From the IMG/VR virus record IMGVR_UViG_3300025141_000016, positions 62,001 through 126,000 of that record: a stretch of DNA of 64,000 nt; one strand, given 5' to 3'. Position 1 is the stretch's first letter. Every line of letters begins with the position of its first letter. Positions 34,617 through 52,469 of this stretch are shown here, piece by piece. Both the position numbers and the translations under genes were made by a program. The notes beneath the pieces are model-generated. The model worked only from the letters and a program-made list of their open reading frames with translations, ran no database searches and was not told the origin of the DNA.

Positions 34617-35747
34617 ATGGCTATCACCTACCGTAACCCCACCAACTACGACGGCACCCCCAAGCCCACCTACGAGGGGTGCGTCCTGTCCACTCACGTT
34701 GAGCGGGACCGGCGCATCATGTCCGACGTATGGGCAGATTGCTTCTATGCCGAAGTCTGGACCGGGACCGAGGTCATCGAAGTGAGTTTGGGCGCGAACC
34801 ATGTCTCTAATGGTGTGGACAACGCGGACACAGATGCGACCGATGAGGTCAAGGTGCTGGTCGCTGCGTGGCGCGAGGCCAAGGCCGAAGCGGCTCGATT
34901 GGAATGGGAAGCCAAGGCTCCCGAGCGTGAGGCGGCTCGCATCAAGGCCGAAGCAGCGGCAACGAAGAAGGCCGTCCGCGAAGCCAAGGCATACCTCAAT
35001 GACCCCACCAAAGGCGACCGGGTAGTGGTTGCACGTCGGCGTGGACGCAACGCCCCTCCCAAGGGAACCGAGGGCGAGGTCTTCTGGACTGGCACCAGTG
35101 GTGATTTCGGAACCCCCCGCGTTGGCTTCAAGGATGATGCAGGTGAAACCCACTGGACCACCGCAGGCAACTGCGATGTAGTCCTGCCGGGTCTTGCCGC
35201 TGGCGAAACCCCTTCCGAGGGATGGGTGGCCTACGCTGACCGCATTCGCGGAGAGCGCAAGGTTGCGGGTGACAAGATCACCGCTGATAGGAAGACCAAG
35301 GCCGAGGCTGACCTCGCCACCCTCCCAGCGATAGGCACCTGGGTCTGCTTGAAGGACGATCAAGCTGTCATCGGCAAGGTGTTCTGGCGGGGCATCACCA
35401 AGAAGGGCCAAGGTCAGGCTCGCATCGGATTCAAAATCCGCAAAAAGGACCGGGATGCTTCCTGGGCTGGGATCGGTGAGTTCGTTGTTCTGACCGGCGA
35501 CCCTCGCAAGAGGGGTGTGCCTGTGGCGGCGTTGGATGCGGTCAAGCCGGACCCCACCAACACCTACGCGGACCCCGCTCCTGTGGTCGAGGCCCCCCTT
35601 CCTCTCGCTCACCTTCCTGCTCCTTTCAACAAGATTGTGGGCGTGGACGGTGAGGGGACCGCCTATGGCGAGCATGGCGAAGTCATCGTCACGCTGACCC
35701 CCGACGCTGCATCCCAGATTGCGGCACTGTTGAGAGGTGTCGCATGA
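34617..35747 (+). CDS. Hypothetical protein with two SH3/KOW-like beta domains and shared C-terminal LPxPF domain
   Basis: Repeated GxVFWxG...RVGFK / GKVFWRG...RIGFK; C-terminus LPAPFNKIVGVDGEGTAYGEHGEVIVTL. Confidence 0.7.
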   Translation: MAITYRNPTNYDGTPKPTYEGCVLSTHVERDRRIMSDVWADCFYAEVWTGTEVIEVSLGANHVSNGVDNADTDATDEVKVLVAAWREAKAEAARLEWEAKAPEREAARIKAEAAATKKAVREAKAYLNDPTKGDRVVVARRRGRNAPPKGTEGEVFWTGTSGDFGTPRVGFKDDAGETHWTTAGNCDVVLPGLAAGETPSEGWVAYADRIRGERKVAGDKITADRKTKAEADLATLPAIGTWVCLKDDQAVIGKVFWRGITKKGQGQARIGFKIRKKDRDASWAGIGEFVVLTGDPRKRGVPVAALDAVKPDPTNTYADPAPVVEAPLPLAHLPAPFNKIVGVDGEGTAYGEHGEVIVTLTPDAASQIAALLRGVA

Positions 35748-35932
35748 TCCTCCGACACTTGGCGGCGTTCCTTCACCGTGCTCGATGTGACCGACAGGTG
35801 CTTATCCCCATGCTCGACAAGTTGTCAGAGCAGGAGCAACAAGCCCTGTGGCGACTTCTCCAGAATGTCGAGGCCGATGCGAAACAGGCGGGTGCCCGTG
35901 AGGGTGCCCGCCAACCGTGGAGGCACATGTGA
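35744..35932 (+). CDS. Small hypothetical protein
   Basis: ATGA coupling; GAGG RBS. Confidence 0.55.
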   Translation: MILRHLAAFLHRARCDRQVLIPMLDKLSEQEQQALWRLLQNVEADAKQAGAREGARQPWRHM

Positions 35933-35934
35933 GT

Positions 35935-36231
35935 ATGATTATCACTGTGAAAACCCAGGCTGCTGGAGCCCTCCCTCGGACGTGTTCGGGAGAAATGCTC
36001 GGTGTCAGACGGGGGATGGGGAGGCTTTTCCTCCTGACAAACCCGTATGGACACTGCCATCGCGAGGGCAAGCCCCCCATGCGGCTTGCCTTGGTGGACG
36101 ACCACAATCAGACCATCTACATCTGGTACTGCGACAAGGCCCCGCGTTGGGCACAGAAGATGCTGGACTCCTACAACACCCGCACGGGGCGGGCCTCCGA
36201 GGCCCCACCCATCGGAGAGCACCATGAGTAA
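35935..36231 (+). CDS. Hypothetical protein
   Basis: Fills the gap in the operon. Confidence 0.45.
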   Translation: MIITVKTQAAGALPRTCSGEMLGVRRGMGRLFLLTNPYGHCHREGKPPMRLALVDDHNQTIYIWYCDKAPRWAQKMLDSYNTRTGRASEAPPIGEHHE

Positions 36232-37096
36232 GATTGACGATCTCATCGAAGGTTGGGCCAAGGGCATGAAGTCCTCGGTTCGTGAAGACCCAGACAAGCC
36301 CCTGGAAGGCTTTGAGGAGTGGACCCTGGACGGGAGCAAGCCCAAGATGGCTTTTGTGCCCGCAGAGTGCCTTGACCCTGCCGACATGTGCGCGAAGGAC
36401 ACGCTGGATGGCCAGCACTGGACTCTCCAGGGACAACCCTTGGAAGCTGCTCATGCCGTTCGTGAGGCTGTCCTCGCCAAGACGGGTCGGCGCTTGAAGG
36501 TGGACTCATGGAAGCCTGTTGCAGCAAAGGTGTTGGGGGTCTCCCGGCTGTTCGCAAAGCGGTGGAAGGGAGTCCTCGATGCTGGCATCGAAGCGGGCTT
36601 GTTTCGTATTGACGACGAGACTCTTTCCTTCCCCATCCTCGTGGCCTTGGACCCCGAGCCTGACATGACCGAGGAAGAGGTCGAGGAGATCGCCACTGGC
36701 ATGTTCGGGTGTCCCCCGAAACCAGAGGTCGAGGATGCCTACATCTACACCCCTCCCGAGAACTGGAACCCCCCTCACACCCTACCGGAGTGTGGGCACA
36801 TGTCCTTTGGGACCAAAGAGGAGCACGAAGCCGCCCACGCCGAGGGGAAGTGCTGCGCCAACTGGAAGCAGGGAACCGTCAACTGGCAGGTGAAGGGGTT
36901 GCACACCCCGGTTCCCCTGAACCGAAGGCGAACGGTCGAAAAGGACGAAGGCTCTGGCTGGCCTGGGCTGTGCTGTGACTCCGAAACGGGGCTCTACATC
37001 GGGGGCCTCGGTAACAACTGCCGCCATTACCACGAAGGACCGGAACGGTGCGTGGTCCATGGGCGGAAGAAAGGGGCCAAGCGCAAGAAGAAATAG
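36224..37096 (+). CDS. Hypothetical protein with Cys/His-rich C-terminal region
   Basis: ATG 36224 after GGAGAG; CGH, CC, CC, CxH, CVVH. Confidence 0.65.
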   Translation: MSKIDDLIEGWAKGMKSSVREDPDKPLEGFEEWTLDGSKPKMAFVPAECLDPADMCAKDTLDGQHWTLQGQPLEAAHAVREAVLAKTGRRLKVDSWKPVAAKVLGVSRLFAKRWKGVLDAGIEAGLFRIDDETLSFPILVALDPEPDMTEEEVEEIATGMFGCPPKPEVEDAYIYTPPENWNPPHTLPECGHMSFGTKEEHEAAHAEGKCCANWKQGTVNWQVKGLHTPVPLNRRRTVEKDEGSGWPGLCCDSETGLYIGGLGNNCRHYHEGPERCVVHGRKKGAKRKKK

Positions 37097-37121
37097 GTGC
37101 GGTAGCACCACCATCATGGAG

Positions 37122-37176
37122 AGGGCCGATAGGCGCTCGCTGCCTTTTGTGGCGGTAGAGCGGCTATCGGCCCTTT
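37122..37176 (+). terminator. Long hairpin (probable terminator) overlapping a class L motif
   Basis: Outer stem AGGGCCGATAG/CTATCGGCCCT; inner CGCTC/GAGCG and GCTGCC/GGCGGT; followed by TTTCTCT. Confidence 0.55.
37153..37167 (+). promoter_or_regulatory. Class L motif
   Basis: CGGTAGagcggCTAT upstream of the baseplate operon. A CCAT variant lies at 37100-37114. Confidence 0.6.
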
Positions 37177-37198
37177 CTCTGTACGGAGGTCAAGCCCT

Positions 37199-38377
37199 TT
37201 GAGCACCGAAGTCCAAATCGGGTTTCCATGCCCCCACCTCATCGTTGAGGAACCCGTCCCTCTCGGGGAAGATCGTAGGTCGCTGGAGCCCAAGGCCCCT
37301 GTGGCTAACGTGGGAAGTGTTCGCATCCTCATAGACGATGCGCTCTACGTCCCTTCCTCGGGGTTGTATTCCCAAGCACTGCTGCAAGCTGCGCCTGGGC
37401 CTTACCGGATTGAGCGGTGTGTTGGGGTCAAAGGCCCCAACGCTAACGTGCTTACGGTGACGGCATCGGGAGGGACTGTGGAGGTTGCCCTGCCCGTGGG
37501 GAACCGCATCAAGGTGGCCTCCCTGGTGAAGACCTTGAAGCTGGGCGCTCTCAATGATCTTGTCACCATCACTTCCCGCAACGGAGCCATCGCTTTCGGG
37601 GACAGCCAGACCACCGGGGCCAAGTCCTTCATCCGAGTCGAGGGGAAAGGGACAGAGGCTCTGGGCTTCTCCCAACTCGGGGCTCGTGGAGTAGAACTCT
37701 ACCCTGCCTGGGAACTGGTCGCTCGCGAGGGCGTGTACCCAAGCGCCACACCACGCGGTTTGCTTCCCGTCCCTGTTCGATACCCCAGGTTCCGTAAGGC
37801 TGTCCGAGGCAACCCAGACATAAAGGTGACCTACAGCGCGATGCCAGAACGGTGCCCACGGTGTCAGGCTACTTACGTCGAGAATGATTACCGGTTCGAT
37901 CTGGAGGGGGCGGTTATCACCGTCCAGAACGAAGACCTCCTGTACCAAATGTGCCTAAAAGCACTCTTGACCCTCCGAGGGTCCAACCCCTATCACCCGG
38001 CCTATGGCTCACGGATCATGTCGCGGGTGGGCAGGAAACGGATGGCGGCTTCGGCGGCTCTGATCCAAGAGGACGTAATGAGTTGCTTGTCTCGTGTTCA
38101 AAGCGTCCAGAAGCAGCAAAGCCAGTACCAGCAGGTCAAGGACCGGGAACGGCTCTACAAGGTCAGCGGGGTTTCCTTGCGGCCAGCCGTGAGTGACCCC
38201 ACGGTGATTCTCCTCGACGTGGCCGTCACCAACGGGACCAACACCCCTGTCACCCTCAACATCGTTTACTCGGCTCCGGGGGCTATTGCTCTGGCAGGGT
38301 CTAACGGACAGTCCCTTGGGCTGGAAACGTCAGGTATGTCGCGGTCGCAATCTCAACGCTTCTTGCTGGACGGGTAG
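37199..38377 (+). CDS. Baseplate wedge protein with gp25/GPW-like C-terminal domain
   Basis: LYQMCLKALLTLRGSNPYHPAYGSRI, a typical gp25-like motif; CPRC; precedes baseplate J. Confidence 0.75.
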   Translation: MSTEVQIGFPCPHLIVEEPVPLGEDRRSLEPKAPVANVGSVRILIDDALYVPSSGLYSQALLQAAPGPYRIERCVGVKGPNANVLTVTASGGTVEVALPVGNRIKVASLVKTLKLGALNDLVTITSRNGAIAFGDSQTTGAKSFIRVEGKGTEALGFSQLGARGVELYPAWELVAREGVYPSATPRGLLPVPVRYPRFRKAVRGNPDIKVTYSAMPERCPRCQATYVENDYRFDLEGAVITVQNEDLLYQMCLKALLTLRGSNPYHPAYGSRIMSRVGRKRMAASAALIQEDVMSCLSRVQSVQKQQSQYQQVKDRERLYKVSGVSLRPAVSDPTVILLDVAVTNGTNTPVTLNIVYSAPGAIALAGSNGQSLGLETSGMSRSQSQRFLLDG

Positions 38378-38386
38378 AGGTAGTAC

Positions 38387-41300
38387 ATGTCCGACACTCC
38401 ACAAGTCTATGGTCCAGACGGCACCCTCCGCGAGACGGTCGTGTTCAGCACCACTGTCCTCACTCGGTTCTTTACGGGTGTGGTCCCCCCCAGTGCTGTC
38501 GAGGTGCAGGTATCTATCAATGGGAGCGGCTTCTCCTCGGACGAAACCCTCGCTCAATGGGGGGACGGTTCATGGGTGGTGCCCAACCCTTCCTATGAGC
38601 CCGATGGGCTGATTCTTTTGGAGGGTGAGAACACCGTTGAAGTGAGAGCCATCCTCCCCAGCGGGACGACCACAGGATCGGCAACTATGACGGTGAGGCT
38701 CGTCACCTCTGCGGACCTTGGAGTGGTAGTAGCTGCTCCCACCAACATCTCGGTGGTCCAACTAAACAATGCGGTTGTGGTCCAGGCCGAGGCCCCCGAG
38801 GACGATAACTTCACGGGGATGAACTACTACGCCTCGATTTACGCAGGGGGTGGGATCACAGGGTACACCCGGATCAATGTCGAGCGTATCGCAGAGGGCG
38901 CTATCACCCAGGAAACCTCCGAGTTTGCTTCGGAGACTGCCGAGTTTGCGGTCAGGGTTGATGCCAACAACGAGCCTGTTGCCGACCCGCTCTACTTCCG
39001 GCTGATGGCTCTCCAAGAAGACGAGGACGAAGCTGTCCTCCAGAGTGACCTTGATGAGCGGTATGAAGTTCCCGAAGAAGCCAGGACCATCCGACTGAAG
39101 TCCACCATGTCGCAGGTTCGGGAAGTGACGGCATACCAGTTCACCCATAACAGGCGGTCGGATCCGACTTCCACACCGGCCACAGTACGGGTCAGTTCTT
39201 TCTCCAACATGGACTCGGGCGACCCCCTTTACTATGTGGTGACTGCCGTTTTCTACGACACCGCCCAGGCCCTTGAATACGAGTCTGCTTTCTCTCCCGA
39301 GGTGGTGGGGAGCCCTGAACTGGTCACTACGGCTCTGGGAGCGATCCCCGCAGTCAATCGCCAGAGCATCGTCCGAGAGTTCATCACGGCCATCTTTAGG
39401 TCCAACCCCCAGATCAAGGTCGAGGTGGGGAGTGTCCTGCGAGACACGGTGATTGACCCGTTCTCATCAGAGAGCGAGAGGGTTCGGTTCCTCCTCGACT
39501 TCTATCACCGAGCACGGACTCCAACCCTCCTCCTCCAGATCGATGACCCCAGCGGATCTGGTACAAGCGTGGCGGTAGCTGACAGCGCCTACAAGCTGGG
39601 CCTCAAATCGGCGCTCTACATTGACTCGTCCCAGCAAGTCCAAGACTTGATCGACTCGGCTTTTGGGGCCTACGCGAGCAACCTCGGGATCCGTCGCCGG
39701 ACAGGAGCCGCTTCCCAAGGGGAAGTGCTGTTCTACACGTCCAAGAAGCCTTCCTCTTCCCTGGTGATCCCGTTGGGGACAACAGTGAGTGGAGGGGGAG
39801 TCTCCTTCATAACGACGCGGGAAGCCACCATCGCCTCTGCCACCATCGCCAGCTACTACAACCCTGTCACCGGGAACTACCAGATTTCGGTGCCCGTCAA
39901 CGCAGGAACCACGGGGTCTTCCACCAACGTCGGGATTGGGCAGATCAAGCAGATCGCCTCATCCGTGACTGGTTCTTTCAGCGTGACCAACTTGGCCGCG
40001 ATGGTGGGGGGACAGGATGCAGAATCCAACCTCGCGCTAACAGCCCGTATCCAGAATCGCCTTGCATCTGTCGATTCGGGGACGGCCCGAGGGTATCTCC
40101 AAACGGCTGCTGATGTACCCGGTGTGGTCAAGGCTAATGTCGTTGCTTCCGGGGATCTCCTCATGCAGCGGGACATAAACGACTCGGGGGTCCACAAGGG
40201 CGGCAAGGTAGATGTGTGGATTCAGGGCAGCAACGAGGTGACCATCACGGACACCTTTGCCTTCACCTTTGAGATAGCCCAGGACATTCAGTTTGAGGTT
40301 GTGGGGGCAGTCACCGACTACACTTTCCGTGCGCTGGACTCGACGTTGAGTGACAGTGACCCCATCGTGGAGATGCTGGACGATGCTGCTGTCGGCTACG
40401 AGTTCCGAAACGCCTCCACAGGGGAGGTCTTTGACCTTACTGGGGTCACCATCACCGCCTACAACACCATCCAGTTGGACACGGATCTTGCCCAACCAGC
40501 CGTAGACTTGACCGACGTGCTGTTGGGGTCGTACCGCCGACGGGTCGGAAGTGAGTTCATTCTCCCACGCCAACCTGTCAGTTCGATCACCGCCGTCGTT
40601 GGGACTGTGGCGGGAACTCTCCCCGAAACCGCTTACCTCTTGGTGCATCCTGATGCGCCCCTCGACATTGGGCGCTCCTCTCTTGCCACCGATTACCTCC
40701 AGATCATTGGGTACACCGATGATGATGGCGAGACTGTTCCCAGTGGGGACACCATCACTATCACCGACGAGGAACACGTCCTTATCGGTCAGTACCCCGA
40801 ATATGTGGACAACCTGGGGGCCAACTACTTGACCATCGTGGTCATGTCCTCGGATGGGCTCACTACCTACGCTGGACCAAACGACCCCGGTGGCAACCCC
40901 GACTACACCATCTCACTGGGAACACAGACCACAGCGGTATCCCTCACGCGAACGGAAGCCAGCACCATCCCGAATGGGGCGACTGTACTGGTGTCTTACT
41001 CGCATGATGAGAACTTCACGGCTACCTACACCACCAACCTGATCGTTGCCCTTACCCAGAACGCGGTGGATGAGGACAAGCACGTCACCGCTGATGTGGT
41101 CGTCAAGGAAGCAATCGAGGTTCCTCTGGACCTCGATTCCACCATCATCTTGATTCGGGGCAGGGACCAAGCAACGGTAGACACAAGCCTCCGCACCAAC
41201 CTCGCCAACTTCTTTGCCAATCTCCGTCTCGGAGATCCGGTACGTCAGTCAGACATTATCGACGTGATAGAGCAGACAGACGGGGTGTCCTATGTAGTCG

Positions 41301-41851: not shown

Positions 41852-41853
41852 AG

Positions 41854-42156
41854 GTGGAGAAATCACCCTTACAATCCAAGAAGTTCCTCGCCTTCCTGCT
41901 CTCCGAGGTGACGTGGAAGATCATCATCATCGTCTGCGTGGTGAAACTCATTGATGACGCGGAAGGGGGACCACTCCTCCTCCACTGGGTCATGCTCACC
42001 GCAGTTCTCATCGCAGGGTTCATCGAGGCAGGATTCATTGGAGGACAAGCGTGGCTCGACAAGTACGTCCGTCTCGCCAAGATCACCACGGAGGCGGCAA
42101 CAGGAGCACCATCCCCCGACCCAGACCCAGAGGGTGCTGGCTCCAGTGATCGGTAG
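41854..42156 (+). CDS. Putative holin
   Basis: SKKFLAFLL N-terminus, two or more TM segments, directly before the endolysin. Confidence 0.6.
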   Translation: MEKSPLQSKKFLAFLLSEVTWKIIIIVCVVKLIDDAEGGPLLLHWVMLTAVLIAGFIEAGFIGGQAWLDKYVRLAKITTEAATGAPSPDPDPEGAGSSDR

Positions 42157-42179
42157 GTTCAACTATAGGAAGGTGAGTA

Positions 42180-42854: not shown

Positions 42855-42862
42855 GGGCGGTG

Positions 42863-42877: not shown

Positions 42878-42905
42878 TGATCCCCGAGGACAGGAGAGAT
42901 CGAAG

Positions 42906-43835
42906 ATGCCCACAAAGAAAGAGATTGAGATGGTCCATCTCGTTCAGAGCATCATCGAGAAGCCCGAAATGAGGAGATACCTAAAGAAGCACTACCAAAA
43001 GTCCATCGGGGAGGGGGCACACCCACACACGGGTTTTTGCAGCATGGCTTCGGATGCGCTGCGCCGTATTCTTGGGGGCCAAGTCCGGGGATTCTCGGGC
43101 TACAAACTGTGCCGCGTGGTGCATGAAGGTGAGCCCCACTATTACCTCACCACCCCTTCGGGAGAGGTGCTTGACCCCACGAGTTCCCAGTTCAAGAAAC
43201 GACCTCCTTATGATCGAGGGCGGGGAGTAGGGTTGCCCACCCCCAGTCGCATCCCTGGAACTGATGTTCAATCTCCTACACAGGGGGCGCGGGCAATCAT
43301 GGAGCACCGACGCAGATCCTCATCCTCTGGCCGGTATCCACCCTATCGAGGTCAGGGGGGTAGGAGAAGTATTATGAACCCTGACCGCTCGGCTCTCATC
43401 CGATTGGCCTCGGCGTTACCTGTCGGGAACGCAGACAGGAAGACCATCCTTACGGGGTTGACCTCCAGCCCATTGAGGACACGCCAAGCAGGGCGGGTTC
43501 CTTCCAACGCCCCAAAGCAAGTGAAGCAAGTGGCGAAGGCTTGGGTCCAGAGTGCCATCAAGGCAGGTGAGGAAGTGATCGCAGAGGAAGGGGAAACCGG
43601 GGCCGAGGCCAAGGGCACCCGTGGGTTCTGGAAGGACCGCCTCTATGTGTATGTTGAGGACTCCGACAAGGGTCCGCGCTGGGTCGTGGGGGACAACTAC
43701 GACCGAGCCACGAACATGATCTACTACCCCGATTCTGATGAGTGGTACTCGATGCCCAGCTATGGGTCAGAAAGGCTCATGCGCGGGGGTTTCCAAAACG
43801 CCTTGGGCAGCGCCGAGATCATCTGGACGGGCTGA
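42906..43835 (+). CDS. Papain/transglutaminase-like (Cys-His-Asp) domain joined in frame to a DRSALIRLAS-leader protein
   Basis: GFCSMASDAL...PHYYL...VLDPTSSQF. Internal AGGAG RBS and ATG at 43374 (MNPDRSALIRLAS). Confidence 0.6.
   Translation: MPTKKEIEMVHLVQSIIEKPEMRRYLKKHYQKSIGEGAHPHTGFCSMASDALRRILGGQVRGFSGYKLCRVVHEGEPHYYLTTPSGEVLDPTSSQFKKRPPYDRGRGVGLPTPSRIPGTDVQSPTQGARAIMEHRRRSSSSGRYPPYRGQGGRRSIMNPDRSALIRLASALPVGNADRKTILTGLTSSPLRTRQAGRVPSNAPKQVKQVAKAWVQSAIKAGEEVIAEEGETGAEAKGTRGFWKDRLYVYVEDSDKGPRWVVGDNYDRATNMIYYPDSDEWYSMPSYGSERLMRGGFQNALGSAEIIWTG
43332..43346 (+). promoter_or_regulatory. Class L motif internal to ORF 42906
   Basis: CGGTATccaccCTAT, then AGGAG and ATG 43374. Confidence 0.55.
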
Positions 43836-44166
43836 CCCTCGGGTCATCCGGTCCCAGGCCACGGCACCACTTGGAGTCGGATTGCGCCCACTTGGTCCTG
43901 GCCGTACCTCGCTTACCTTTCTTCAACGCTCGCTCTGCCTTCATCGCGTCGGAGCGTCCCTCATAGGGTCCGTACACGGCACGGATCACCCACGGTCGGT
44001 GCTTGCTGGTGTACTTCCCCCCACCCACGATCTCTCCGTTGTGTTGGCGAAGCCGACGAGCCACGTCGGTCGTACAGCCGACGTAGTGGAACCCAGGCAG
44101 CGGGTGACCCCGTTTGCCGACCCTGCGTTCAAGGGACTGAATGACGTAGACCCAGTATTCGGCCAT
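43819..44166 (-). CDS. GIY-YIG nuclease, SLX1-like
   Basis: WVYVIQS...YVGCTTDVARRLRQHNGEIVGGGKYTSKHRPW...AMKAE; GGAGG RBS. Confidence 0.88.
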   Translation of the reverse strand: MAEYWVYVIQSLERRVGKRGHPLPGFHYVGCTTDVARRLRQHNGEIVGGGKYTSKHRPWVIRAVYGPYEGRSDAMKAERALKKGKRGTARTKWAQSDSKWCRGLGPDDPRVSPSR

Positions 44167-44175
44167 CACTACCTC

Positions 44176-44190
44176 CGGTCGGGAGTCTAT
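44176..44190 (+). promoter_or_regulatory. Class L motif
   Basis: CGGTCGggagtCTAT upstream of 44220. Confidence 0.5.
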
Positions 44191-44219
44191 ACCCCTCCTC
44201 CCCACAGAGGACCGTACCC

Positions 44220-45092
44220 GTGAACCACCCATCCCCCAGCCGTGTGGCCTCCCGCTGGATCAAAGCAGCCCCCGCCGTGGATCTTGATCCACGGAAGGTC
44301 TACTACCACGGGACACCCTCGGAGAAGGCGGGGAAGTCCATCCTCCGCTCTGGCATCGAACCGCCTGACCTTTCGACCCGCAAGGGTCCGCTTCGCCCTG
44401 TGGGCGGCAAGGTGTACCTGACTGACAAACTCTCCTATGGGGTCATCTACGCTCTCGGGGGGGCCGTGGCAGGACACGAGTATCCTGAGCGGCATTGGCA
44501 GGGCAGCGAGTGGGGATACCTGTTCGTGGTGCCGGGGAAGGCTCTCAAAGAAGTCCAGCCCGATGAAGATTCCGTGGGAGAGATGATCTCAAACTCGACT
44601 GGTCCCGGCTGGCTTGATGACTTGGCCGAAGAAATCCTTACGAAGAAACACCCAGCAGAACCCGAGCCTATCGCATTGTCCTATTCGTTCGACTTCGACA
44701 GCGACTTGAATGACAAGGCCAAAGAGCAGTTCTTTTCAGACACGGGGATTGACCCCAGTACGTTCGACTACCACGACGACCGAATCACCCTTGAAGGTTG
44801 GTTTTGGGACGAGGGTTCTTCCTACAACGAGGACTGGTTTTGGGAATATGAGCAAGGGAACCTGTACGACCTCGTGATGGACGGTGACTATGCCGCCTGG
44901 GCTGAAGCCGGAAAGATCCTACTTGGTGAGATGGACTCCGAACAGGAGTTGGAGTTGATCTCATTGGGGGCACACATCGCCCATGAAGGGAAGATCACCC
45001 CGACCGAGTGCTGGAAGATCCACAAGAGCAAGGCACCCCTGTTGAAGAAGAACGGGTCCAACTTCTTTCAGGTTGCGGAGCGGTGCCGATGA
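44220..45092 (+). CDS. ADP-ribosyltransferase-fold protein with N-terminal PSPSRVASRW tag
   Basis: YYHGT...ILRSGI...VYLT...Y.VIYA pattern of H-Y-type ART domains. Confidence 0.6.
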   Translation: MNHPSPSRVASRWIKAAPAVDLDPRKVYYHGTPSEKAGKSILRSGIEPPDLSTRKGPLRPVGGKVYLTDKLSYGVIYALGGAVAGHEYPERHWQGSEWGYLFVVPGKALKEVQPDEDSVGEMISNSTGPGWLDDLAEEILTKKHPAEPEPIALSYSFDFDSDLNDKAKEQFFSDTGIDPSTFDYHDDRITLEGWFWDEGSSYNEDWFWEYEQGNLYDLVMDGDYAAWAEAGKILLGEMDSEQELELISLGAHIAHEGKITPTECWKIHKSKAPLLKKNGSNFFQVAERCR

Positions 45093-45574
45093 CCAAGCCT
45101 TCCCCCAGCCGTGTAGCCTCCCGTTACCGAGAGGCCGCGATCACCTTTCGGGATGAGAGTTCGCCCCGTGTGCAGTACGCCCGACGGTTCTCACTGTGTG
45201 ACTCGGAAGCAGACCCACCCCGCAAGCGTGAGTACCTGTTCACGGATGAGTACCGAACCCACAACCGCAAGACATACAAGCGGTTGAAGAAGCCGGTGCT
45301 GGAGAGCCGTGGGGTCACCGACCCTTGCGACGTTGCCTACATCGACTACGGCGGGGGCGGGAAAGACCTGTATCTTCATCTGGTGATCACGCGAGAAGAC
45401 CACCGAGGGAAAGGGCTCGCCACAAGGCTACTCAAAGAGTTCTACTCCAAGAAGGTGCCCAAGGGAGCGGTTGTGCGCTGGGGTCGCATTATGAACCCAA
45501 CCAGCATGGCTCTGTTTGAGAAGATGAAGAAAGCACGCCCCGATGTGGTTCACATGGGCGGCAAGTTCTACTGA
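45089..45574 (+). CDS. GNAT-family acetyltransferase with N-terminal PSPSRVASRY tag
   Basis: LYLHLVITREDHRGKGLATRLL; NPTSMALFEK. Confidence 0.75.
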   Translation: MTKPSPSRVASRYREAAITFRDESSPRVQYARRFSLCDSEADPPRKREYLFTDEYRTHNRKTYKRLKKPVLESRGVTDPCDVAYIDYGGGGKDLYLHLVITREDHRGKGLATRLLKEFYSKKVPKGAVVRWGRIMNPTSMALFEKMKKARPDVVHMGGKFY

Positions 45575-46488: not shown

Positions 46489-46585
46489 ACGATCTTCCTC
46501 CTCATCAGCGTAGATAGTGGTATCACAGTACCGACTTCCAGGGAAACCTTACCCCCTCATACAAGCCCTCAAAGGGGCGATGTGT

Positions 46586-46600
46586 CGATAGTGGTCTTAT
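46586..46600 (+). promoter_or_regulatory. Class L motif
   Basis: CGATAGtggtcTTAT upstream of 46676/47482. Confidence 0.55.
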
Positions 46601-46675
46601 ACCCCTCTGCGGGCAGAGAGGTGCGGACCATGTGCGCGAAATGCAGTAACGTACTGATCGGTTCCTGGCTTCCTG

Positions 46676-47479
46676 TTGGGGTACACCGATATGTATGAGA
46701 AAAACGCCGGAATCAAGGAATGGATGGGGTGGATGGCACAGCCTCTTTCCGTCATCCTGAAAGGGCACAAAGACCTCATCTACGGACCCGTGGATGGCCT
46801 GATGGATGAAGTGATCCGTCAGATCGCTCCCCAGATTGTGAAGGCCATTGGAGAACGAGAGATCGATGAGGACGTGGAGGAGTTTCTGGAAGGTGCCCAG
46901 GAAGGCCGTTTCGATGCCCTTTCAGGCTACCTTGCTGACCCTGACCTCACGGCCCCCGACGATGAACAGGCGGGTTACGACTGGGGGTTTTCTCATGCCG
47001 AGGAATGGAAGGGAAAGACTCTCCCCACCGCTGTCGAGCGAAAGGTGGTGCAGGAGCAGATCAAGGAGTTCCGAAGCCGTGTCACAGAAGAAGTGGTCAT
47101 TGACCTCATGGAAAAGACATGGCACGCCCTATCACCCTCCCACACCATCAAGGCCATCATCAGGGCCGTCAAGAAGCATGGTTGGAAACTCGGTATCGGG
47201 TTTGTGCTCTTTGAGATCGTTGAGCACGCCCTCTTGCCAGCCGTGATGATCAAGCTGACGGGCAACCCCCACTGGGCTATTTTGGGCACCCTCCCCATCG
47301 GTGAGATCATCTACGCCATCGCCATGCGTGTGTTGGGCAGGGCAGACAAGAACTTGGACAAGTTGGACGAGGACGGTCACTTGGATTGGTATGAGGCCAA
47401 GTACGGCCCGGTGAGACTGGCCTCCCAACGTCGCCCTTCGTGTGAGCAAGTCGCATACCGCTACTGCACAGGGAGGTAG
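46676..47479 (+). CDS. Hypothetical protein with hydrophobic hairpin and C-terminal PSCEQVAYRY tag
   Basis: Hydrophobic region LGIGFVLFEIVEHALLPAVMI...; start uncertain (ATG 46691). Confidence 0.65.
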   Translation: MGYTDMYEKNAGIKEWMGWMAQPLSVILKGHKDLIYGPVDGLMDEVIRQIAPQIVKAIGEREIDEDVEEFLEGAQEGRFDALSGYLADPDLTAPDDEQAGYDWGFSHAEEWKGKTLPTAVERKVVQEQIKEFRSRVTEEVVIDLMEKTWHALSPSHTIKAIIRAVKKHGWKLGIGFVLFEIVEHALLPAVMIKLTGNPHWAILGTLPIGEIIYAIAMRVLGRADKNLDKLDEDGHLDWYEAKYGPVRLASQRRPSCEQVAYRYCTGR

Positions 47480-47481
47480 CC

Positions 47482-49344
47482 ATGAGCAGTTGCCCCATTC
47501 GGTCACAGGCATACGGCGGCCTCCCTTCCGTCGGGGGCTTCGGATCCATCATGGAGTTCGGAGTCGGGCTTGGGACCATCTTTGAGGCCGCTCATTGTCT
47601 ACTTGGCTCCCTCGGCAAGAATCTGGGGAGAGAGGATGACTGGGTGGCGATGCTCGGTGTCGAGAAAGGCCATCTGAACGAGGAAGCTGGGATCATCAAG
47701 GACGCCCTCCGTGAGTATGCTCGACCTGTCTACCGCGAGCAGATGCTCGACTTCTCCCAGTACAAGCCCGAGTGGCAGGAGAGGATGCGGGAGTCTGCGG
47801 AGAGGCAGGTCGAGGACATTCAACAGGCTGGACCCAAGTTGGCCTCTCTCGCCAAGGGTAGGGCATCGGCTTTTGTGGAAAATCTGGAAACGGAGGATGC
47901 CCCTGTCGAGTGGGTGAACACCGTTGAGGCCACCTACCTCATGGTGATCGCGTTGGCCGAGGCTGCGGTGAAGGCCGTGAATGACTGGCCCGACTCTATG
48001 GGGAACCCCTTTGCGGACCCCAAGGTGACCCGAGCCGCTGGGCTCATGGAAAAGCATCTCGCGGCTCTGTTCCGATGGGGATCCTCCCAGCGGGTTGCGC
48101 GTCGATACGCTTCCCAGAAGTTCCAGTGGACGCGCTCTCCCCTCTCCTACAACGTGAGCGGGACTGCGAAGCGGCTCGGACTCCTCGACTCGGAAGCAGG
48201 TGACCCCGATGAGTGGGAGACTTACTTCGCGGAAACCCAAAAGGAACTCCGCAAGAAGAACCGCCAGCGGTACAAAAAGCCTCGGTACGAAACAATCCCT
48301 GGTGCGGAACCTGGGACGGTTGCCTTCCTCGACTACCACGAGTTCCCAAACTACTACGGGGACGGGAAACTCTACCTTTACCTCGACTATGTATCGACTC
48401 GGCATGACCGGCTCGGTCAGGGGCACGCTCGGAAGCTGTTTGAGGAGATGCTGCGGAAGCACGGCAAGGACTCCCACTACGATTTCGGACGCATCGCGCA
48501 CAAGGCGGTCTACAAGATTTTCCGCGACTGGCAGTCGCGGGGGATCAACGTCCGGGGAAAGAACTGGGGCGGCTACACCGACGAGGAAGTCGGCCTCCGA
48601 AGCGCCTCTGCCGTCCGGGTCGTTGCTCGCTTTGAAAATCTCCGAAAAACAGACCGGCACACCGTCTACCACGGGACAGGCATCGGCCAACTCCCCCAGT
48701 TGATCAATGGGTTTGATGCAACCAAGATGAAAGGCCGAAGCTACAACACGCGCCCCCACAAAGGGATGTTTGTCTCACCCGACCTTGCCACTGCAAAGAA
48801 GTTCGGTCAGGTGATCCTTGAACTGGAAATCCCCGCCCGTTTCCTGCATGGGCGCGATTGGGCCGGAAAACCCTTACACCCCAAACTACAAGAGGAAGCG
48901 GAAGGGATGTTCCCCGAGTCGTTCCGCCCCGACCTCTCTTACATGCTGGAAGCCGGGGAACCACAGGCATTGGTTCTTGGCCTCGTTTCGCCCAGGCAGA
49001 TCCGCCGCGTGCTTTATGACGGGAAATGGTACTCCCGTAAAGACTTCCTCGCCCTCGACTGGGAAGACCTCAAAACCCCTCGCCGTCGCCCTATGCGCGA
49101 TCTCGGAGTGGATGTTTCTGATCCCAGCCTTTCGTGGGAGGACTTCATAGAAGCCAGCGCAACTCTCTTTGAGTCACCCGTCGCCCGCATCCAAAAAGTG
49201 CTTGGTCGTTGGGTGGAGCAAGGGAAGAACGCCCGCTGGGTGGCGAAGCAGCTTGAAGTGGTGTGGGAACCTCTCACCGCTCGTCGCTATGCCGAACGAT
49301 TCTTCGGGACGCAAGACAGGGAGGCACAGAGGGGGATGCCGTGA
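47482..49344 (+). CDS. Multidomain protein: helical domain plus GNAT plus ART-like domain, separated by RVxxRY/F motifs
   Basis: SSQRVARRYA; LYLDYVSTRHDRLGQGHARKLF (GNAT); ASAVRVVARF; VYHGT...GMFVSPDLATAKKFG..ILELEI (ART). Confidence 0.7.
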   Translation: MSSCPIRSQAYGGLPSVGGFGSIMEFGVGLGTIFEAAHCLLGSLGKNLGREDDWVAMLGVEKGHLNEEAGIIKDALREYARPVYREQMLDFSQYKPEWQERMRESAERQVEDIQQAGPKLASLAKGRASAFVENLETEDAPVEWVNTVEATYLMVIALAEAAVKAVNDWPDSMGNPFADPKVTRAAGLMEKHLAALFRWGSSQRVARRYASQKFQWTRSPLSYNVSGTAKRLGLLDSEAGDPDEWETYFAETQKELRKKNRQRYKKPRYETIPGAEPGTVAFLDYHEFPNYYGDGKLYLYLDYVSTRHDRLGQGHARKLFEEMLRKHGKDSHYDFGRIAHKAVYKIFRDWQSRGINVRGKNWGGYTDEEVGLRSASAVRVVARFENLRKTDRHTVYHGTGIGQLPQLINGFDATKMKGRSYNTRPHKGMFVSPDLATAKKFGQVILELEIPARFLHGRDWAGKPLHPKLQEEAEGMFPESFRPDLSYMLEAGEPQALVLGLVSPRQIRRVLYDGKWYSRKDFLALDWEDLKTPRRRPMRDLGVDVSDPSLSWEDFIEASATLFESPVARIQKVLGRWVEQGKNARWVAKQLEVVWEPLTARRYAERFFGTQDREAQRGMP

Positions 49345-49446
49345 ACTGGGTGGCGGCCAACTTCAATCAGTACCGGAAGTTTCTGACCTGCTGACTCACC
49401 GGGCGGAACCTAACCTCCCAATAAAAAGGTAGGTTTTTCTTCTGGA

Positions 49447-49481
49447 GGGGGGTTCAACTCGGGCCGGTATCTCCGTATAGG
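49447..49481 (+). promoter_or_regulatory. Class E promoter
   Basis: GGGGGGTTCAACTCGGGCCGGTATCTCCGTATAGG. Confidence 0.8.
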
Positions 49482-49553
49482 CGTGAACCGTAGGGTGACC
49501 TACGCTCTTTACTCACCCCTTCCATGCTCCATTGAGGAGCCCCGGAGATCGTC

Positions 49554-49766
49554 ATGGGCCGCAAAATCCGCCGTCAACGTGCCAAGGGCAAACGGGCTGA
49601 CCGTATCCACGCCAGCATCAAGGCCCAGCGTGGGCTCGACAGGGCTGAACACTTCGCCAAGGGTGGCGATCTCGTTCAGTATTGGGGTGGACCCAAGACG
49701 GTGACGCGAAACCGCAAGCGGGATGCGTCCCGTAATGCGTGTCGCGTCACCGTGAAGGACTACTAA
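49554..49766 (+). CDS. Small basic hypothetical protein
   Basis: GGAGA RBS; R/K-rich, 70 aa. Confidence 0.65.
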   Translation: MGRKIRRQRAKGKRADRIHASIKAQRGLDRAEHFAKGGDLVQYWGGPKTVTRNRKRDASRNACRVTVKDY

Positions 49767-49780
49767 CCCCGGAGTCTTCT

Positions 49781-50167
49781 ATGTCCCCCACCACCGAAAT
49801 CAGTATCGCCTTCCTTCGCCGCATCTATGCCAAGGGAAGTCTCTCGATAACCGAGGCGGTGACCGCTTTTGATGACCGGTGGGGTGCCCTCCCCGAAGGG
49901 GGTGGCACCCTCAACTACCATCTCCAGTTCTCGCTGGCTCACTACCTGGGGGAACTGCCTTCCTACTCGCACCTGTCCCCCACAGTCCTCGTCGCTGCCC
50001 CCACCACGGACAAGCAACGCGAGGTGTTGAAGGTGTGGGAGGAAGGCACCGATGGCGGCAACCTCCCTGCCGACTTCGATTGGACCACCTACGAGTCTAT
50101 CCCTTACCGCTTCGCTCCAGGCTGGCGGCGACGGTACAAGACGATTGAGCCCTGTCCTTCCTGCTGA
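49781..50167 (+). CDS. Hypothetical protein
   Basis: ATG 49781 after GGAG. Confidence 0.6.
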   Translation: MSPTTEISIAFLRRIYAKGSLSITEAVTAFDDRWGALPEGGGTLNYHLQFSLAHYLGELPSYSHLSPTVLVAAPTTDKQREVLKVWEEGTDGGNLPADFDWTTYESIPYRFAPGWRRRYKTIEPCPSC

Positions 50168-50211
50168 CCTTTTGACCCCCGGACTCGCACCGAGCGAGCA
50201 TGGAGAGTTTC

Positions 50212-50718
50212 GTGGATACCAACGTCCTTCGCGGTGCGAAAATCCTTGCCATTGAGGGCATGGCCCCTTCCTCGGAAACCGTCACCCTTACGACCGACCG
50301 AGGGGTGCTGCGTCTGCACCACCATCAGGATTGCTGTGAATCCGTGGCGGTGGAAGACGTGACCGGTGACCCTGCCGACTTGATCGGTGCGATCATCCGT
50401 GACTTCCGCGAAGACACCAAGGACCACCCTGACACCAGTGAGTCCTGGGTCCAGATGTGGACGTTCTACAACATCGTGACGGACAAGGCTGATGCCCAGA
50501 TCCGTTGGTGCGGGGCCAGCAACGGCTACTACAGCATCTCTGTGAGCATGGAGTGGGAGACTACCCTTCCCCCCATCTCCAAGTGCCTGCCGCCCCCCTT
50601 CGCCGGGATCCGCAGGATTGACGAAGACGGCACCGCCCGGAACTACCAGGGCGACGTGCTCGTCACCCTCCCCCCAGAGTCGGTGAACAACATCCTCTCT
50701 GCCTATGACCTCTCGTGA
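50212..50718 (+). CDS. Conserved-type phage protein (HHQDCCE...SNGYYS) with shared C-terminal LPxPF domain
   Basis: HHQDCCESVAVED, WTFY, RWCGASNGYYS. GTG 50212 follows GGAG (alternative ATG 50200). Confidence 0.7.
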   Translation: MDTNVLRGAKILAIEGMAPSSETVTLTTDRGVLRLHHHQDCCESVAVEDVTGDPADLIGAIIRDFREDTKDHPDTSESWVQMWTFYNIVTDKADAQIRWCGASNGYYSISVSMEWETTLPPISKCLPPPFAGIRRIDEDGTARNYQGDVLVTLPPESVNNILSAYDLS

Positions 50719-50729
50719 TGGAGCCTCCC

Positions 50730-51500
50730 ATGACTGACCCCAAGCCCCGCTTGTCCGTCGCTCCATTGAACGAGGATCGACTCCGGCAGTACGTCCTCGA
50801 CATTCTGTCGGGTCAGGTGCTCACGAGCGACCAAGTTCGTGCTCGGGACATAGGCATGGTCTTCATGCCTCTGATCATGGGAGCCCTGTCTCCCCCGGAC
50901 GAGGTGATCGTCAAACACATGGGGAGTGCGACTCCCCCCGAAACCCTCGACGGGGATCCCCCCAAGCCGGAACATCCTGGCTACCCAGAGGGAGTAGGGG
51001 AACCTCCCACCAAACCTGTCCTGGGCAAGATCAATCCCCAGATCCTCTCTGACCTTGATTGGGGGGAGACTACGGAGATCGAGGTGAATGAAGCCAAGGC
51101 CATCGTGGAGGCCGGAAACTCCCGGCTGGTTCGGGAGTGGGACGCAGCCCTGATGGCGTGGGAACGCGCAATCGAGGCCGAGGGGAAGGTCCGTTGTGAG
51201 ATAGACGCGACCCATGAAGCTGCAATCGAGGCGTGGAAGGCCAAACTGGCCGTCCACACGGATCGCCAAGCCGAACGCCAATCTGCCCACGACGAGTGGG
51301 TGGCCCGTTTCGATGTGGTCTTTGACGAGTGGCGGAACAACATCGCCGTCGTCGCGGGCAACATGAAGGACACCTTTCCCCGGTCGATCAACGGCTACCC
51401 CATGTTCCATGCTATCGCACTCATCGGCCATGACGACTGGAAGCGCATCCGTGCTGCCGTCATCCGTGAACAAGATCGCGCCAAGACCTTGGAGGTCTGA
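50730..51500 (+). CDS. Hypothetical protein (Pro-rich plus coiled coil)
   Basis: Long ORF; PRSINGYPMF block. Confidence 0.65.
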   Translation: MTDPKPRLSVAPLNEDRLRQYVLDILSGQVLTSDQVRARDIGMVFMPLIMGALSPPDEVIVKHMGSATPPETLDGDPPKPEHPGYPEGVGEPPTKPVLGKINPQILSDLDWGETTEIEVNEAKAIVEAGNSRLVREWDAALMAWERAIEAEGKVRCEIDATHEAAIEAWKAKLAVHTDRQAERQSAHDEWVARFDVVFDEWRNNIAVVAGNMKDTFPRSINGYPMFHAIALIGHDDWKRIRAAVIREQDRAKTLEV

Positions 51501-51877
51501 TGTACGTCCGAGAAATCGAGCATGAGGATGGGTCAGTAACGGTCGAGAAATACACCCCTGGGAGCCCCCAGGAAGCCATGGCAGCTTTCAGCGACCTCTG
51601 GGCGATGGAATCCACCCATGGCCCCTACACCATATCAACGGTCTTTCTTGCGCTTGGCCCGTGCCCTTATGAGACGATGGTGTTTGTCGGGGATTCCAAT
51701 GCCGACAGAGAGATGGACCGCTACAGCACCCGAGCAGGAGCGATCAAGGGGCACCACCGGATCTCGTGTAAGTGGCGGGACATTTTCACGGCTAACCTTG
51801 CCCTGTTGGGGGAGGGTTTCTGGCTTCCTGTTGGAGAAGATTCTGCGGAGAAAACACCCACCACCGCTGAACTTTAG
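51500..51877 (+). CDS. Hypothetical phage protein (YETMVF...RYST...GH type)
   Basis: ISTVFL...YETMVF...RYSTRAGAIKGH; TGATG coupling. Confidence 0.65.
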   Translation: MYVREIEHEDGSVTVEKYTPGSPQEAMAAFSDLWAMESTHGPYTISTVFLALGPCPYETMVFVGDSNADREMDRYSTRAGAIKGHHRISCKWRDIFTANLALLGEGFWLPVGEDSAEKTPTTAEL

Positions 51878-51884
51878 TGCCCCA

Positions 51885-51919
51885 GGGGGGTTCAACTCGC
51901 CCCCCTATCTCCGTATAGG
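51885..51919 (+). promoter_or_regulatory. Class E promoter
   Basis: GGGGGGTTCAACTCGCCCCCCTATCTCCGTATAGG. Confidence 0.8.
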
Positions 51920-51977
51920 AGTGAGGCCCCCATCTATACCCTTTTCCAGCCCTGCATCGAGCAGGCAAGGAGCCCCT

Positions 51978-52469
51978 ATGACCTACCGAAATGTCGAGTA
52001 TCCCGAGGCTGTTGCCGCAGCTAATGAGGGACTTCCCTTCACGATTTGCTGGGAGTTCTCTGGTGCCAATGGCAAGAACAAATCCGGCACGTCCGACAAG
52101 TTCTGGCTGATTGAGCGCACCTGCAAAAACGGTGAGGTGTACCGACGGTTCGGCAAGAAAGGAGCCAACGGCCAGCGTCAACTGATTCCGAGTGTCGCGA
52201 GCGGGCTGCTCCAAGGTCGGGGAAAGGAAAAAAAGGGGTACGTCCTCTCCTTCGCTTCCGTTGTCGCTCCCGCTGGGCAGTCCGACCACCCCGACCCGAG
52301 GGTAAGGCCCCTGATCTCCAAGATGCTCCCTGCCCCTTTCTGCCACATCCGCATGGTCCATGAGGCACCGATTGGGACATGGAACGCCTATGACAGCGAA
52401 GGGAACGTCGTGGTCACCCTGGCTGCGGACACGGCAGCAGAAATCATCGCAACCTACACGCTGGCATAG
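51978..52469 (+). CDS. WGR-like domain protein with shared C-terminal LPxPF domain
   Basis: SDKFWLI...VYRRFGKKGANGQ...KEKKGY; AAGGAG RBS. Confidence 0.7.
   Translation: MTYRNVEYPEAVAAANEGLPFTICWEFSGANGKNKSGTSDKFWLIERTCKNGEVYRRFGKKGANGQRQLIPSVASGLLQGRGKEKKGYVLSFASVVAPAGQSDHPDPRVRPLISKMLPAPFCHIRMVHEAPIGTWNAYDSEGNVVVTLAADTAAEIIATYTLA

What the first reader, a model, noticed from the sequence alone, without database searches (positions are those of the whole stretch)
35590..52469. Unrecognised ~45-aa C-terminal module shared by three unrelated early proteins
Seen: 34617..35747 ends LAHLPAPFNKIVGVDGEGTAYGEHGEVIVTLTPDAASQI. 50212..50718 ends ISKCLPPPFAGIRRIDEDGTARNYQGDVLVTLPPESVNNI. 51978..52469 ends ISKMLPAPFCHIRMVHEAPIGTWNAYDSEGNVVVTLAADTAAEI. 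The consensus is LPxPFxxIxxh...A...GxVhVTLxxxxxxxI. The N-terminal domains are unrelated (SH3-like, DCCE family, WGR-like). All three genes also carry the AYYGA leader hairpin. Inference: a portable localisation, oligomerisation or docking module that recruits diverse early proteins to one site or partner.
Basis: partly seen in the sequence, partly recalled or inferred. Interest (0 to 1): 0.68.

Follow-up and report, generated by a model that had tools for sequence, protein, structure and literature searches.

The report
Orphan shuffled C-terminal domain, jumbo phage
Four otherwise unrelated proteins of an uncultured marine jumbo phage end in the same small, compactly folding 50-residue domain that matches no known family; it most likely acts as a tethered protein-docking tag, but no partner has been identified.

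Summary
Genes A (34617-35747), B (50212-50718) and C (51978-52469) end in a homologous module of about 50 residues. A fourth copy (D) lies just outside the window.

- **Homology:** profile-profile comparison of the A-type and C-type modules gives E 1.3e-16. The N-terminal parts show no similarity to each other.
- **Fold:** AlphaFold2 predicts a compact domain (pLDDT 93.5). It has a proline-rich cap (PL..LPxPF), three beta strands and a terminal helix.
- **No known relatives:** it matches nothing in Pfam, PHROGs, NCBIfam, PDB sequences or PDB/BFVD/ESM-Atlas folds.
- **Rarity:** a profile search of 1.84 billion representatives found about ten true carrier clusters, four of them this phage's own proteins or near-identical ones. 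The word-index searches raised the total to about 40 proteins, all from relatives of this marine phage.
- **Architecture:** the carriers have at least five N-terminal architectures plus a possible stand-alone form. The module is always at the extreme C-terminus, usually after a proline-rich linker.
- **Selection:** it is under purifying selection.
- **Composition:** it is mostly acidic and has no conserved polar or metal-binding residues. This argues against an enzyme or a nucleic-acid binder.

A tethered protein-docking role is the best reading, but it is inferred. No partner is known, and a homodimer prediction gave no answer. "Early" expression is not supported by any data. The shared AYYGA-loop leader hairpin is confirmed for A, B and C.

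The parts
34617..35747 (+). Gene A (376 aa). Orphan N-terminal domain, charged helical stretch and two repeats of a small G-x-V-F-W...R-[VI]-G-F-K unit, then a Pro-rich linker and the module.
   Evidence: ORF. 26 homologs, most ending in the module. No Pfam or PDB family.
35580..35744 (+). Module copy in A (aa 322-376).
   Evidence: HMM E 5.8e-20 in the genome ORF set. Alignments A1 and A5.
50212..50718 (+). Gene B (168 aa from GTG 50212; an in-frame ATG lies at 50200). DUF7448 domain directly followed by the module.
   Evidence: Pfam DUF7448 2e-21. Ortholog P0006 is 168 aa. RBS and hairpin spacing.
50551..50715 (+). Module copy in B.
   Evidence: HMM E 5.9e-17. hhalign against A-type modules E 7.3e-9. 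dN/dS 0.28 against the L009 ortholog.
51978..52469 (+). Gene C (163 aa). WGR-like domain, short linker, module. Its stop lies 8 nt before the NAD-dependent DNA ligase gene (52478-54526).
   Evidence: AF2 model pLDDT 91.5. WGR-like. Ligase Pfam domains on the L009 ortholog.
52293..52466 (+). Module copy in C (aa 106-163). Predicted as a short helical turn, three beta strands and a terminal helix.
   Evidence: Module-only AF2 model pLDDT 93.5, pTM 0.73. dN/dS 0.115 against 0.448 for C's N-terminal part.
34584..34598 (+). Leader hairpin of A: 5-bp stem, loop ACTGA, 18 nt before the ATG.
50184..50198 (+). Leader hairpin of B: 5-bp stem, loop ACCGA, 13 nt before GTG 50212.
51951..51965 (+). Leader hairpin of C: 5-bp stem, loop ATCGA, 12 nt before the ATG.
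34515..34575 (+). Repeated upstream element (core GGGGGTTCAAC...TATCTCCGTATAGGAGTGAGGCCC) ahead of A. The same element lies ahead of C (core at 51886) and about 750 nt upstream of B (core at 49448).
   Evidence: Alignment. 23 copies of the core in the genome.

Best explanation
The shared tail is a previously undescribed, autonomously folding domain of about 45-55 residues. It has a conserved proline-rich cap (N-P-L-x-x-L-P-x-P-F), a three-stranded antiparallel sheet and a C-terminal helix. It has been moved between genes within one clade of marine jumbo phages.

It most likely works as a tethered protein-protein docking module. Through a flexible Pro/Ala-rich linker it attaches different effector domains to one common partner or site in the infected cell or on an assembling phage structure. 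The effector domains include a WGR-like putative nucleic-acid-end binder, DUF7448, and the A-type repeat protein.

Shown: homology, the confidently predicted compact fold (a model, not a measured structure), C-terminal position, linker composition, multiple diverged copies per genome, purifying selection, and absence from known families.

Inferred: that it binds a protein, and that all copies share the same partner.
For: - **Homology and rarity.** hhalign E 1.3e-16. Exactly four copies in the genome with a clean score gap. Only about 10 true carrier clusters among 1.84e9 representatives.
- **Independent fold.** pLDDT 93.5 when modelled alone, and the same secondary structure inside full-length C.
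- **Position.** Always terminal: the median is 2 residues from the stop and the maximum is 19. The preceding 25 residues are 17.8% Pro against 6.6% background.
- **Varied carriers.** A-type, WGR-like, DUF7448, D, P0014-type, and a 71-aa possible stand-alone form.
- **Shuffling.** B's modules group with the C modules of this phage and its closest relatives and share the I-S-K insertion. D and the stand-alone form group with the A-type modules. D occupies the locus of A2-type genes in relatives.
- **Old paralogs.** Copies within the genome are only 30-42% identical in protein and about 50-60% in DNA, so they are maintained rather than recently converted.
- **Purifying selection.** dN/dS is 0.115 for the C module and 0.284 for the B module.
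- **Residue pattern.** Conserved positions are hydrophobic or Pro/Gly. Net charge is mostly negative. There is no conserved Cys/His cluster or polar catalytic set.
- **Shared regulation and neighbourhood.** A, B and C share the leader hairpin. The A and C genes are adjacent in relatives.
Against: - No partner was identified and there is no experimental data of any kind.
- The conserved residues look structural, so no binding surface can be named.
- B lacks a clear linker.
- In A-type proteins the module is less conserved than the rest of the protein.
- Distant A-like proteins do without it, so it is dispensable for that scaffold.
- The fold is a very common small arrangement that says nothing about function.
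Confidence: 0.45

Rival explanations
1. Self-association domain: the modules bind one another, as homo- or hetero-oligomers. This would assemble the A, B, C and D proteins into one multi-protein complex without a separate hub.
For: - Several diverged copies coexist in each genome, and the carrier genes are clustered and co-regulated.
- A small beta-sheet domain with a free edge strand could pair by strand augmentation. This is an inference from the model.
Against: - The module folds confidently as a monomer.
- No computational support was obtained.
- Paralog modules have diverged to 30-42% identity, which is unusual if they must still recognise one another.
Confidence: 0.15
2. Virion- or assembly-targeting tag: the module docks its carriers onto a tail/baseplate or capsid component, either for packaging or as assembly factors.
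For: - Gene A keeps its place a few kb upstream of the sheath-initiator-like and Baseplate_J-like genes in four lineages.
- D and the A2-type genes lie between two giant structural-looking proteins of 2013 aa and 1172 aa.
- C-terminal targeting of varied cargo to HK97-fold shells is established for encapsulins (general knowledge).
Against: - C is coupled to DNA ligase and A sits beside an AAA_33 kinase, which points to nucleic-acid metabolism.
- D and the A2-type genes are on the strand opposite to the structural genes.
- No virion proteome exists.
- Known capsid or encapsulin targeting signals are short peptides, not folded domains.
Confidence: 0.15
3. The module binds a non-protein ligand (nucleic acid or a small molecule), or acts in cis as a regulatory or stabilising cap for the carrier.
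For: - The partner domains (WGR-like) suggest nucleic-acid work.
- In C the module is the best conserved part of the protein.
Against: - Net charge is negative in most copies.
- There are no conserved basic, aromatic-surface or metal-binding residues.
- The long flexible linkers and unrelated N-terminal domains argue against a specific in-cis contact.
Confidence: 0.1
4. Chance or compositional similarity, or non-functional debris of partial gene duplications.
For: The motif is short, and the genome is GC-rich with many Pro/Ala-rich stretches.
Against: - E 1.3e-16 profile-profile.
- 0 of 200 shuffles reach even one regex hit against 4 observed.
- dN/dS is well below 1.
- Conserved across phages whose carriers share only 30-55% identity.
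Confidence: 0.01

Closest known systems
Dockerin modules of cellulosomal enzymes (dockerin-cohesin system)
   Same: A small module at the C-terminus of many unrelated proteins, preceded by a Pro/Thr-rich linker and present in several paralogous copies per genome. Its role is to dock diverse domains onto one scaffold. This is the architecture that this module resembles.
   Different: There is no sequence or fold relation: no Pfam hit and no duplicated Ca-binding loop-helix repeat. No cohesin-like receptor was identified. The analogy is one of design only.
Encapsulin cargo-loading peptides and phage capsid-targeting sequences
   Same: Terminal address tags that send unrelated cargo proteins to one viral-type shell, often behind flexible linkers.
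   Different: Those are short, unstructured peptides. This is a confidently predicted folded domain of about 50 residues. There is no evidence that the carriers are packaged.
WGR domain proteins (PARP1-3; bacterial WGR/MolR-like such as PDB 2ra8)
   Same: The N-terminal domain of carrier C resembles WGR: Z 6.3, rmsd 2.5 over 65 residues, 29% identity to 2ra8; PARP2/3 WGR also listed.
   Different: This concerns the partner domain, not the module. Known WGR proteins carry other C-terminal parts (catalytic, LRR-like). None of the hits covers residues 106-163.
Chemokine-like / half-PH 'N-loop, three strands, C-terminal helix' arrangement
   Same: Same order of secondary-structure elements. The best structural rows are a PH domain, an archaeal ribosomal protein and several chemokines.
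   Different: Z is only 2.5-3.4 with 3-17% identity, in the range of chance arrangements. There are no disulfides. No functional inference is possible.
DUF3659 and other D-x-D-G-N...G-x-I hairpin repeats
   Same: The beta-hairpin 'D..G.V.V.L' of the module scored weakly against such repeat proteins.
   Different: Only 17-45 of the 54 profile positions match, in multiple stretches of unrelated repeat proteins. The cap and helix are absent. These hits are treated as spurious.

Membership tests
Any curated family for the module (Pfam-A, PHROGs v4, NCBIfam 20) | Significant profile match to residues of the module | tested here: not met
   No hit at E <= 1 (Pfam, PHROGs) or E <= 0.1 (NCBIfam) for the isolated modules or over the module part of the full proteins.
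Any solved structure (PDB), by sequence or fold | Sequence E < 1e-3, Foldseek E < 1e-3, or Z >= 6-8 | tested here: not met
   Best PDB sequence hit E 0.65 over 12 residues. Foldseek best E 0.29. VIA-align maximum Z 3.4. BFVD best E 0.15. ESM Atlas TM <= 0.60 on short stretches.
DUF7448 (PF24240), N-terminal domain of B | Score above the gathering cut-off of 27 bits | tested here: met
   76.8 bits, E 2e-21, residues 11-116. phrog_2650 E 4.5e-30.
WGR domain (PF05406), N-terminal domain of C | Score above the cut-off of 22 bits; WGR fold | tested here: inconclusive
   18.9 bits, E 0.0016, below the cut-off. Fold: 2ra8 WGR Z 6.3 with 29% identity; PARP3 WGR Z 4.4. Foldseek 2ra8 E 0.017, probability 1.00.
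   No Pfam hit in any of 22 A-type members and no PDB sequence hit.
Dockerin (type I/II) | Duplicated calcium-binding loop-helix segment; Pfam Dockerin_1 | tested here: not met
   No Pfam match. The predicted structure is mainly beta with a single helix.
AbrB/SpoVT/MazE swapped-hairpin domain (considered because of the 'V-D-x-x-G...V-x-L-P' pattern) | Pfam MazE_antitoxin/SpoVT match or swapped-hairpin fold match | tested here: not met
   No Pfam hit. No such chain among the listed Foldseek or VIA rows.
Short terminal targeting peptides (encapsulin CLP, T4 CTS) | Short, disordered peptide; carrier found inside the shell | tested here: not met
   The module is a compact folded domain. Packaging is not testable with these tools.

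The most novel reading that the evidence does not exclude
The module is an address tag read by a dedicated phage-encoded receptor, giving a dockerin/cohesin-like or cargo-loading-like system in jumbo phages. It would gather a changing set of effector proteins at one site, such as a replication/repair focus or an assembling particle. New cargo would be recruited simply by recombining the 150-nt tag onto a gene.
Probability: 0.25. Interest if true: 0.7.

Novelty: new variant of a known kind. Interest (0 to 1): 0.45.

Why it matters
If the module is a docking tag, it defines a set of proteins that act together in a group of large, uncultured marine phages whose genes are almost all unannotated. 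It would also mark a hub that organises them. A 50-residue, autonomously folding tag with a defined receptor would be a useful handle for finding that hub by pull-down, and could serve as a portable tag. As it stands, the result adds a clean new domain family with documented domain shuffling. It is interesting to phage-protein specialists but not surprising in kind.

Tried and rejected
- **Homodimer prediction.** Two copies of the module with alignment A5: verdict 'no answer', score 0.00. This is no evidence either way.
- **Phage database.** blastn of the region and tblastn of C against 50,697 phage records gave no match.
- **IMG/VR.** Scanning with C alone confirmed no relative.
- **ESM Atlas.** Feature search for the C module and for A gave no usable hit.
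- **Multi-stretch hits of the big profile search** (P0008, P0009, P0012, P0015, P0016, P0018). These are repeat proteins (IgGFc-binding/SH3, choline-binding, CHU_C, DUF3659, YDG). They match only the hairpin and were rejected as relatives.
- **P0051.** Module behind a kinesin-like N-terminus on a 751-bp contig. Treated as a probable chimeric assembly.
- **P0024.** A frameshifted copy of a C ortholog.
- **Nucleus-forming (chimallivirus-like) phage?** No RNA-polymerase beta (PF00562) or tubulin (PF00091) match in the 297-kb record. This is weak negative evidence, because such subunits are very divergent and the record is estimated to be 67% complete. The nuclear-import idea was therefore not pursued.
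- **Clamp-binding or SH3-ligand linear motif for LPxPF.** Rejected because the segment is predicted to be part of the fold (pLDDT > 90) and does not fit QL[SD]LF or PxxP.
- **Literature.** Searches for DUF7448, for WGR with jumbo phage, and for docking domains with jumbo phage returned nothing.
Full report
**Setting.** The window is bases 62001-126000 of a single 297,104-bp virus record. It is linear, and CheckV estimates 67% completeness. G+C is 57-61%. The DNA occurs in several marine metagenomes. The window encodes a DNA polymerase and a helicase. It also encodes a sheath-initiator-like protein and an AAA_33 kinase and a PG-binding/M23 peptidase. The orthologs of two further genes carry a weak Baseplate_J hit and NAD-dependent DNA ligase domains. 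Many ORFs have no family. No record in the 50,697-genome phage collection resembles it.

**Checking the observation.** The three ORFs exist and end as quoted.
- A profile built from the three tails finds them again, and also finds a fourth gene at E 4e-6 among all 4,277 stop-to-stop ORFs of the genome.
- With a 35-sequence profile the four copies score E 1e-17 to 1e-20, and nothing else scores below E 1.
- A regular expression for the consensus hits 4 ORFs, against 0 in 200 residue shuffles.
- The fourth gene, D (112 aa), lies on the minus strand at genome 59066-59404, about 2.6 kb before the window.
- BLASTP of the A and C tails gives E 3e-8.
It compared 18 A-type modules with 7 C-type modules.
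- The N-terminal parts share nothing.
- B is DUF7448.
- C is WGR-like. It falls below the Pfam cut-off, but has a Z 6.3, 29%-identity structural match to the WGR domain of 2ra8, and also matches PARP WGR domains.
- A has no recognisable family, so the 'SH3-like' label is unconfirmed.
A GGAGAG site lies 4 nt upstream, and the ortholog is 168 aa.

**Anatomy of the module.** The alignment of 35 copies has these invariant or near-invariant positions: P and L of an N-P-L segment, L-P-x-P-[FYW], an Ile three residues later, an Ala, a Gly, a Leu, and an Ala in the final helix.
- AlphaFold2 predicts a compact domain both alone (pLDDT 93.5, pTM 0.73) and inside full-length C (pLDDT 91.5).
- In the full-length model a dip to pLDDT 59 in the linker separates the module from the WGR-like domain.
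- The predicted elements are a short turn of helix in the Pro-rich cap, three beta strands and a ten-residue C-terminal helix.
- The module ends a median of 2 residues (maximum 19) before the stop codon.
- The 25 residues in front of it are 17.8% proline against 6.6% background. B is the exception, because its DUF7448 domain abuts the module directly.
- Net charge is negative in 30 of the 35 aligned copies.
- No conserved polar, basic or metal-binding set exists.

**Is it known?** No.
- It has no match in Pfam, PHROGs or NCBIfam.
- PDB sequences give nothing.
- Foldseek against PDB (best E 0.29) and BFVD (best E 0.15) gives nothing significant.
- An exhaustive structural alignment to 48,161 PDB representatives has a maximum Z of 3.4. 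The top rows are a PH domain, an archaeal ribosomal protein and several chemokines, which reflects only the common loop / three strands / helix order.
- The ESM Atlas also gives nothing.

**Distribution.** An HMMER search of 1.84 billion cluster representatives with the four-copy profile returned 16 hits at E <= 1e-3.
- Six of the 16 are unrelated repeat proteins that match only the hairpin.
- The true hits are the phage's own four proteins or close relatives, three further WGR-like carriers, an A2-type protein, a 206-aa protein with another N-terminus, and a 71-aa possible stand-alone form.
- Word-index searches added three more C orthologs beyond P0004 and a frameshifted copy, and 25 homologs of A besides A itself. 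Most of those with a complete C-terminus end in the module. P0049 (221 aa) does not, and P0044 also gave no module hit.
- Distant A-like proteins in IMG/VR contigs lack the module or carry a degenerate one. The module is therefore an accessory of that scaffold.

**Evolution.**
- In more distant relatives (L005, L013-L015) the A and C genes are adjacent. They sit in the order 261-aa gene, 125-aa gene homolog, A, C, and a few kb later the baseplate genes.
- In this genome and its 286-kb relative, C sits with B next to the ligase gene. In this genome A has stayed by the kinase and baseplate genes.
- B-type carriers were seen only in this phage and its closest relatives.
- B's modules group with the C modules of this phage and its closest relatives and share the I-S-K insertion. 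D and the stand-alone form group with A-type modules. The tree is weakly resolved.
- D occupies the position and orientation of A2-type genes in relatives. This lies between a 2013-aa and a 1172-aa structural-looking gene.
- Copies within the genome are 30-42% identical in protein and poorly conserved in DNA. They are old paralogs, not recent conversions.
- Against the 286-kb relative, dN/dS is 0.115 for the C module and 0.448 for C's WGR-like part. It is 0.284 for the B module and 0.108 for B's DUF7448 part. Each value rests on one pairwise comparison.

**Regulation.**
- A 5-bp-stem hairpin with an A-Y-Y-G-A loop lies 12-18 nt before the starts of A, B and C, and of about ten other genes.
- Most of these hairpins follow a roughly 60-nt repeated element whose core, GGGGGTTCAAC, occurs 23 times in the genome.
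- D has no hairpin of its own, but it lies in a unit headed by that element.
- This supports co-regulation. Nothing here shows that the class is early.

**How it most likely works.** Several features fit a tethered protein-protein docking module, and fit poorly with an enzyme or a nucleic-acid binder:
- a small stable domain, always terminal, on a flexible leash;
- fusion to unrelated domains;
- maintenance in several diverged copies under purifying selection;
- an acidic surface charge;
- conservation confined to core-type residues.

Whether the copies bind one common partner, bind each other, or bind a virion component cannot be decided.
- The one complex prediction allowed (homodimer) returned 'no answer' and counts neither way.
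- Two context clues point to nucleic-acid end metabolism. C is coupled to DNA ligase in three lineages (own, L009, L012), and A sits beside an AAA_33 kinase in three (own, L005, L016).
- The neighbourhood of A and of D/A2 points instead to tail genes.
- I therefore give 0.45 to docking on a shared partner, 0.15 to self-association, 0.15 to virion or assembly targeting, and 0.1 to a ligand-binding or in-cis role.

**Verdict.** The module is a new orphan domain family. Its portability is shown, and its function is inferred. Interest is moderate. New phage domains are common, but a clean, shuffled, multi-copy tag with a testable hub hypothesis is a good experimental lead.

Noticed in passing
Genome-wide; in the window at 44220 (N-terminus of a 290-aa ORF), 45008 region (188-aa GNAT-like ORF), twice inside 47482-49344, and at the end of 46676-47479: A peptide motif [S/A/P]-x-[S/A]-[R/Q]-V-A-[S/A/R]-R-[Y/W/F] ('SRVASRY') occurs 21 times in the genome's ORFs. 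It sits at N-termini and at internal domain boundaries, including 4 times in a 1519-aa ORF at genome 190585-195141. It looks like a linker, cleavage or targeting tag. None of the module carriers has it.
   Followed up: partly
Window 33964, 34515, 49448, 51886, 54859, 56704 (cores); 23 sites genome-wide: A repeated upstream element of about 60 nt, with core GGGGGTTCAAC and a CTCC-GTATA-GGAG palindrome. It is usually followed by a GC-rich 5-bp hairpin with an AYYGA loop and then the ribosome-binding site. It is probably a promoter/leader class for a phage-specific transcription or translation control.
   Followed up: partly
Window 47482-49344 (620 aa), 44220-45092 (290 aa), 45008-45574 (188 aa): The 620-aa ORF appears to be a fusion. 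Its middle part resembles the 188-aa GNAT-like ORF and its last part resembles the 290-aa ORF, each preceded by the SRVASRY-type motif. This similarity was read by eye from the translations and was not tested. The ortholog in the 286-kb relative is 796 aa and carries an extra PAP2 domain.
   Followed up: no
Window 52469/52478 and 34500/34617: Gene C ends 8 nt before the NAD-dependent DNA ligase gene. This adjacency recurs in L009 and L012. Gene A follows an AAA_33 kinase gene here, and the two genes are neighbours also in L005 and L016. Together with the WGR-like domain, this hints at a nick or end repair theme.
   Followed up: partly
L001:7066-8203 (genome 59066-60203, minus strand): D lies downstream of a DUF7694 gene, between a 2013-aa and a 1172-aa structural-looking gene. 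In relatives (L004, L022) an A2-type carrier sits at this locus in the same orientation. D may be what is left of such a gene.
   Followed up: partly
Window 43819-44232 (minus strand): A GIY-YIG/T5orf172-type homing-endonuclease-like gene lies on the opposite strand, wedged between two plus-strand genes and overlapping both ends. It is conserved in the 286-kb relative.
   Followed up: no
L020:2974-3927; L023, L025, L026 around 3000-3630: Distant A-like proteins in other large IMG/VR phage contigs (up to 461 kb) keep the N-terminal 'R-[IV]-M-S-D-V-W' domain and the G-x-V-F-W repeat but lack the module. One has a CxxC...CxxC zinc ribbon between the repeats.
   Followed up: no
P0051 (107 aa, 751-bp ENA contig): A module copy sits behind a kinesin-motor-like N-terminal peptide. 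This is probably a chimeric assembly rather than a real architecture.
   Followed up: no
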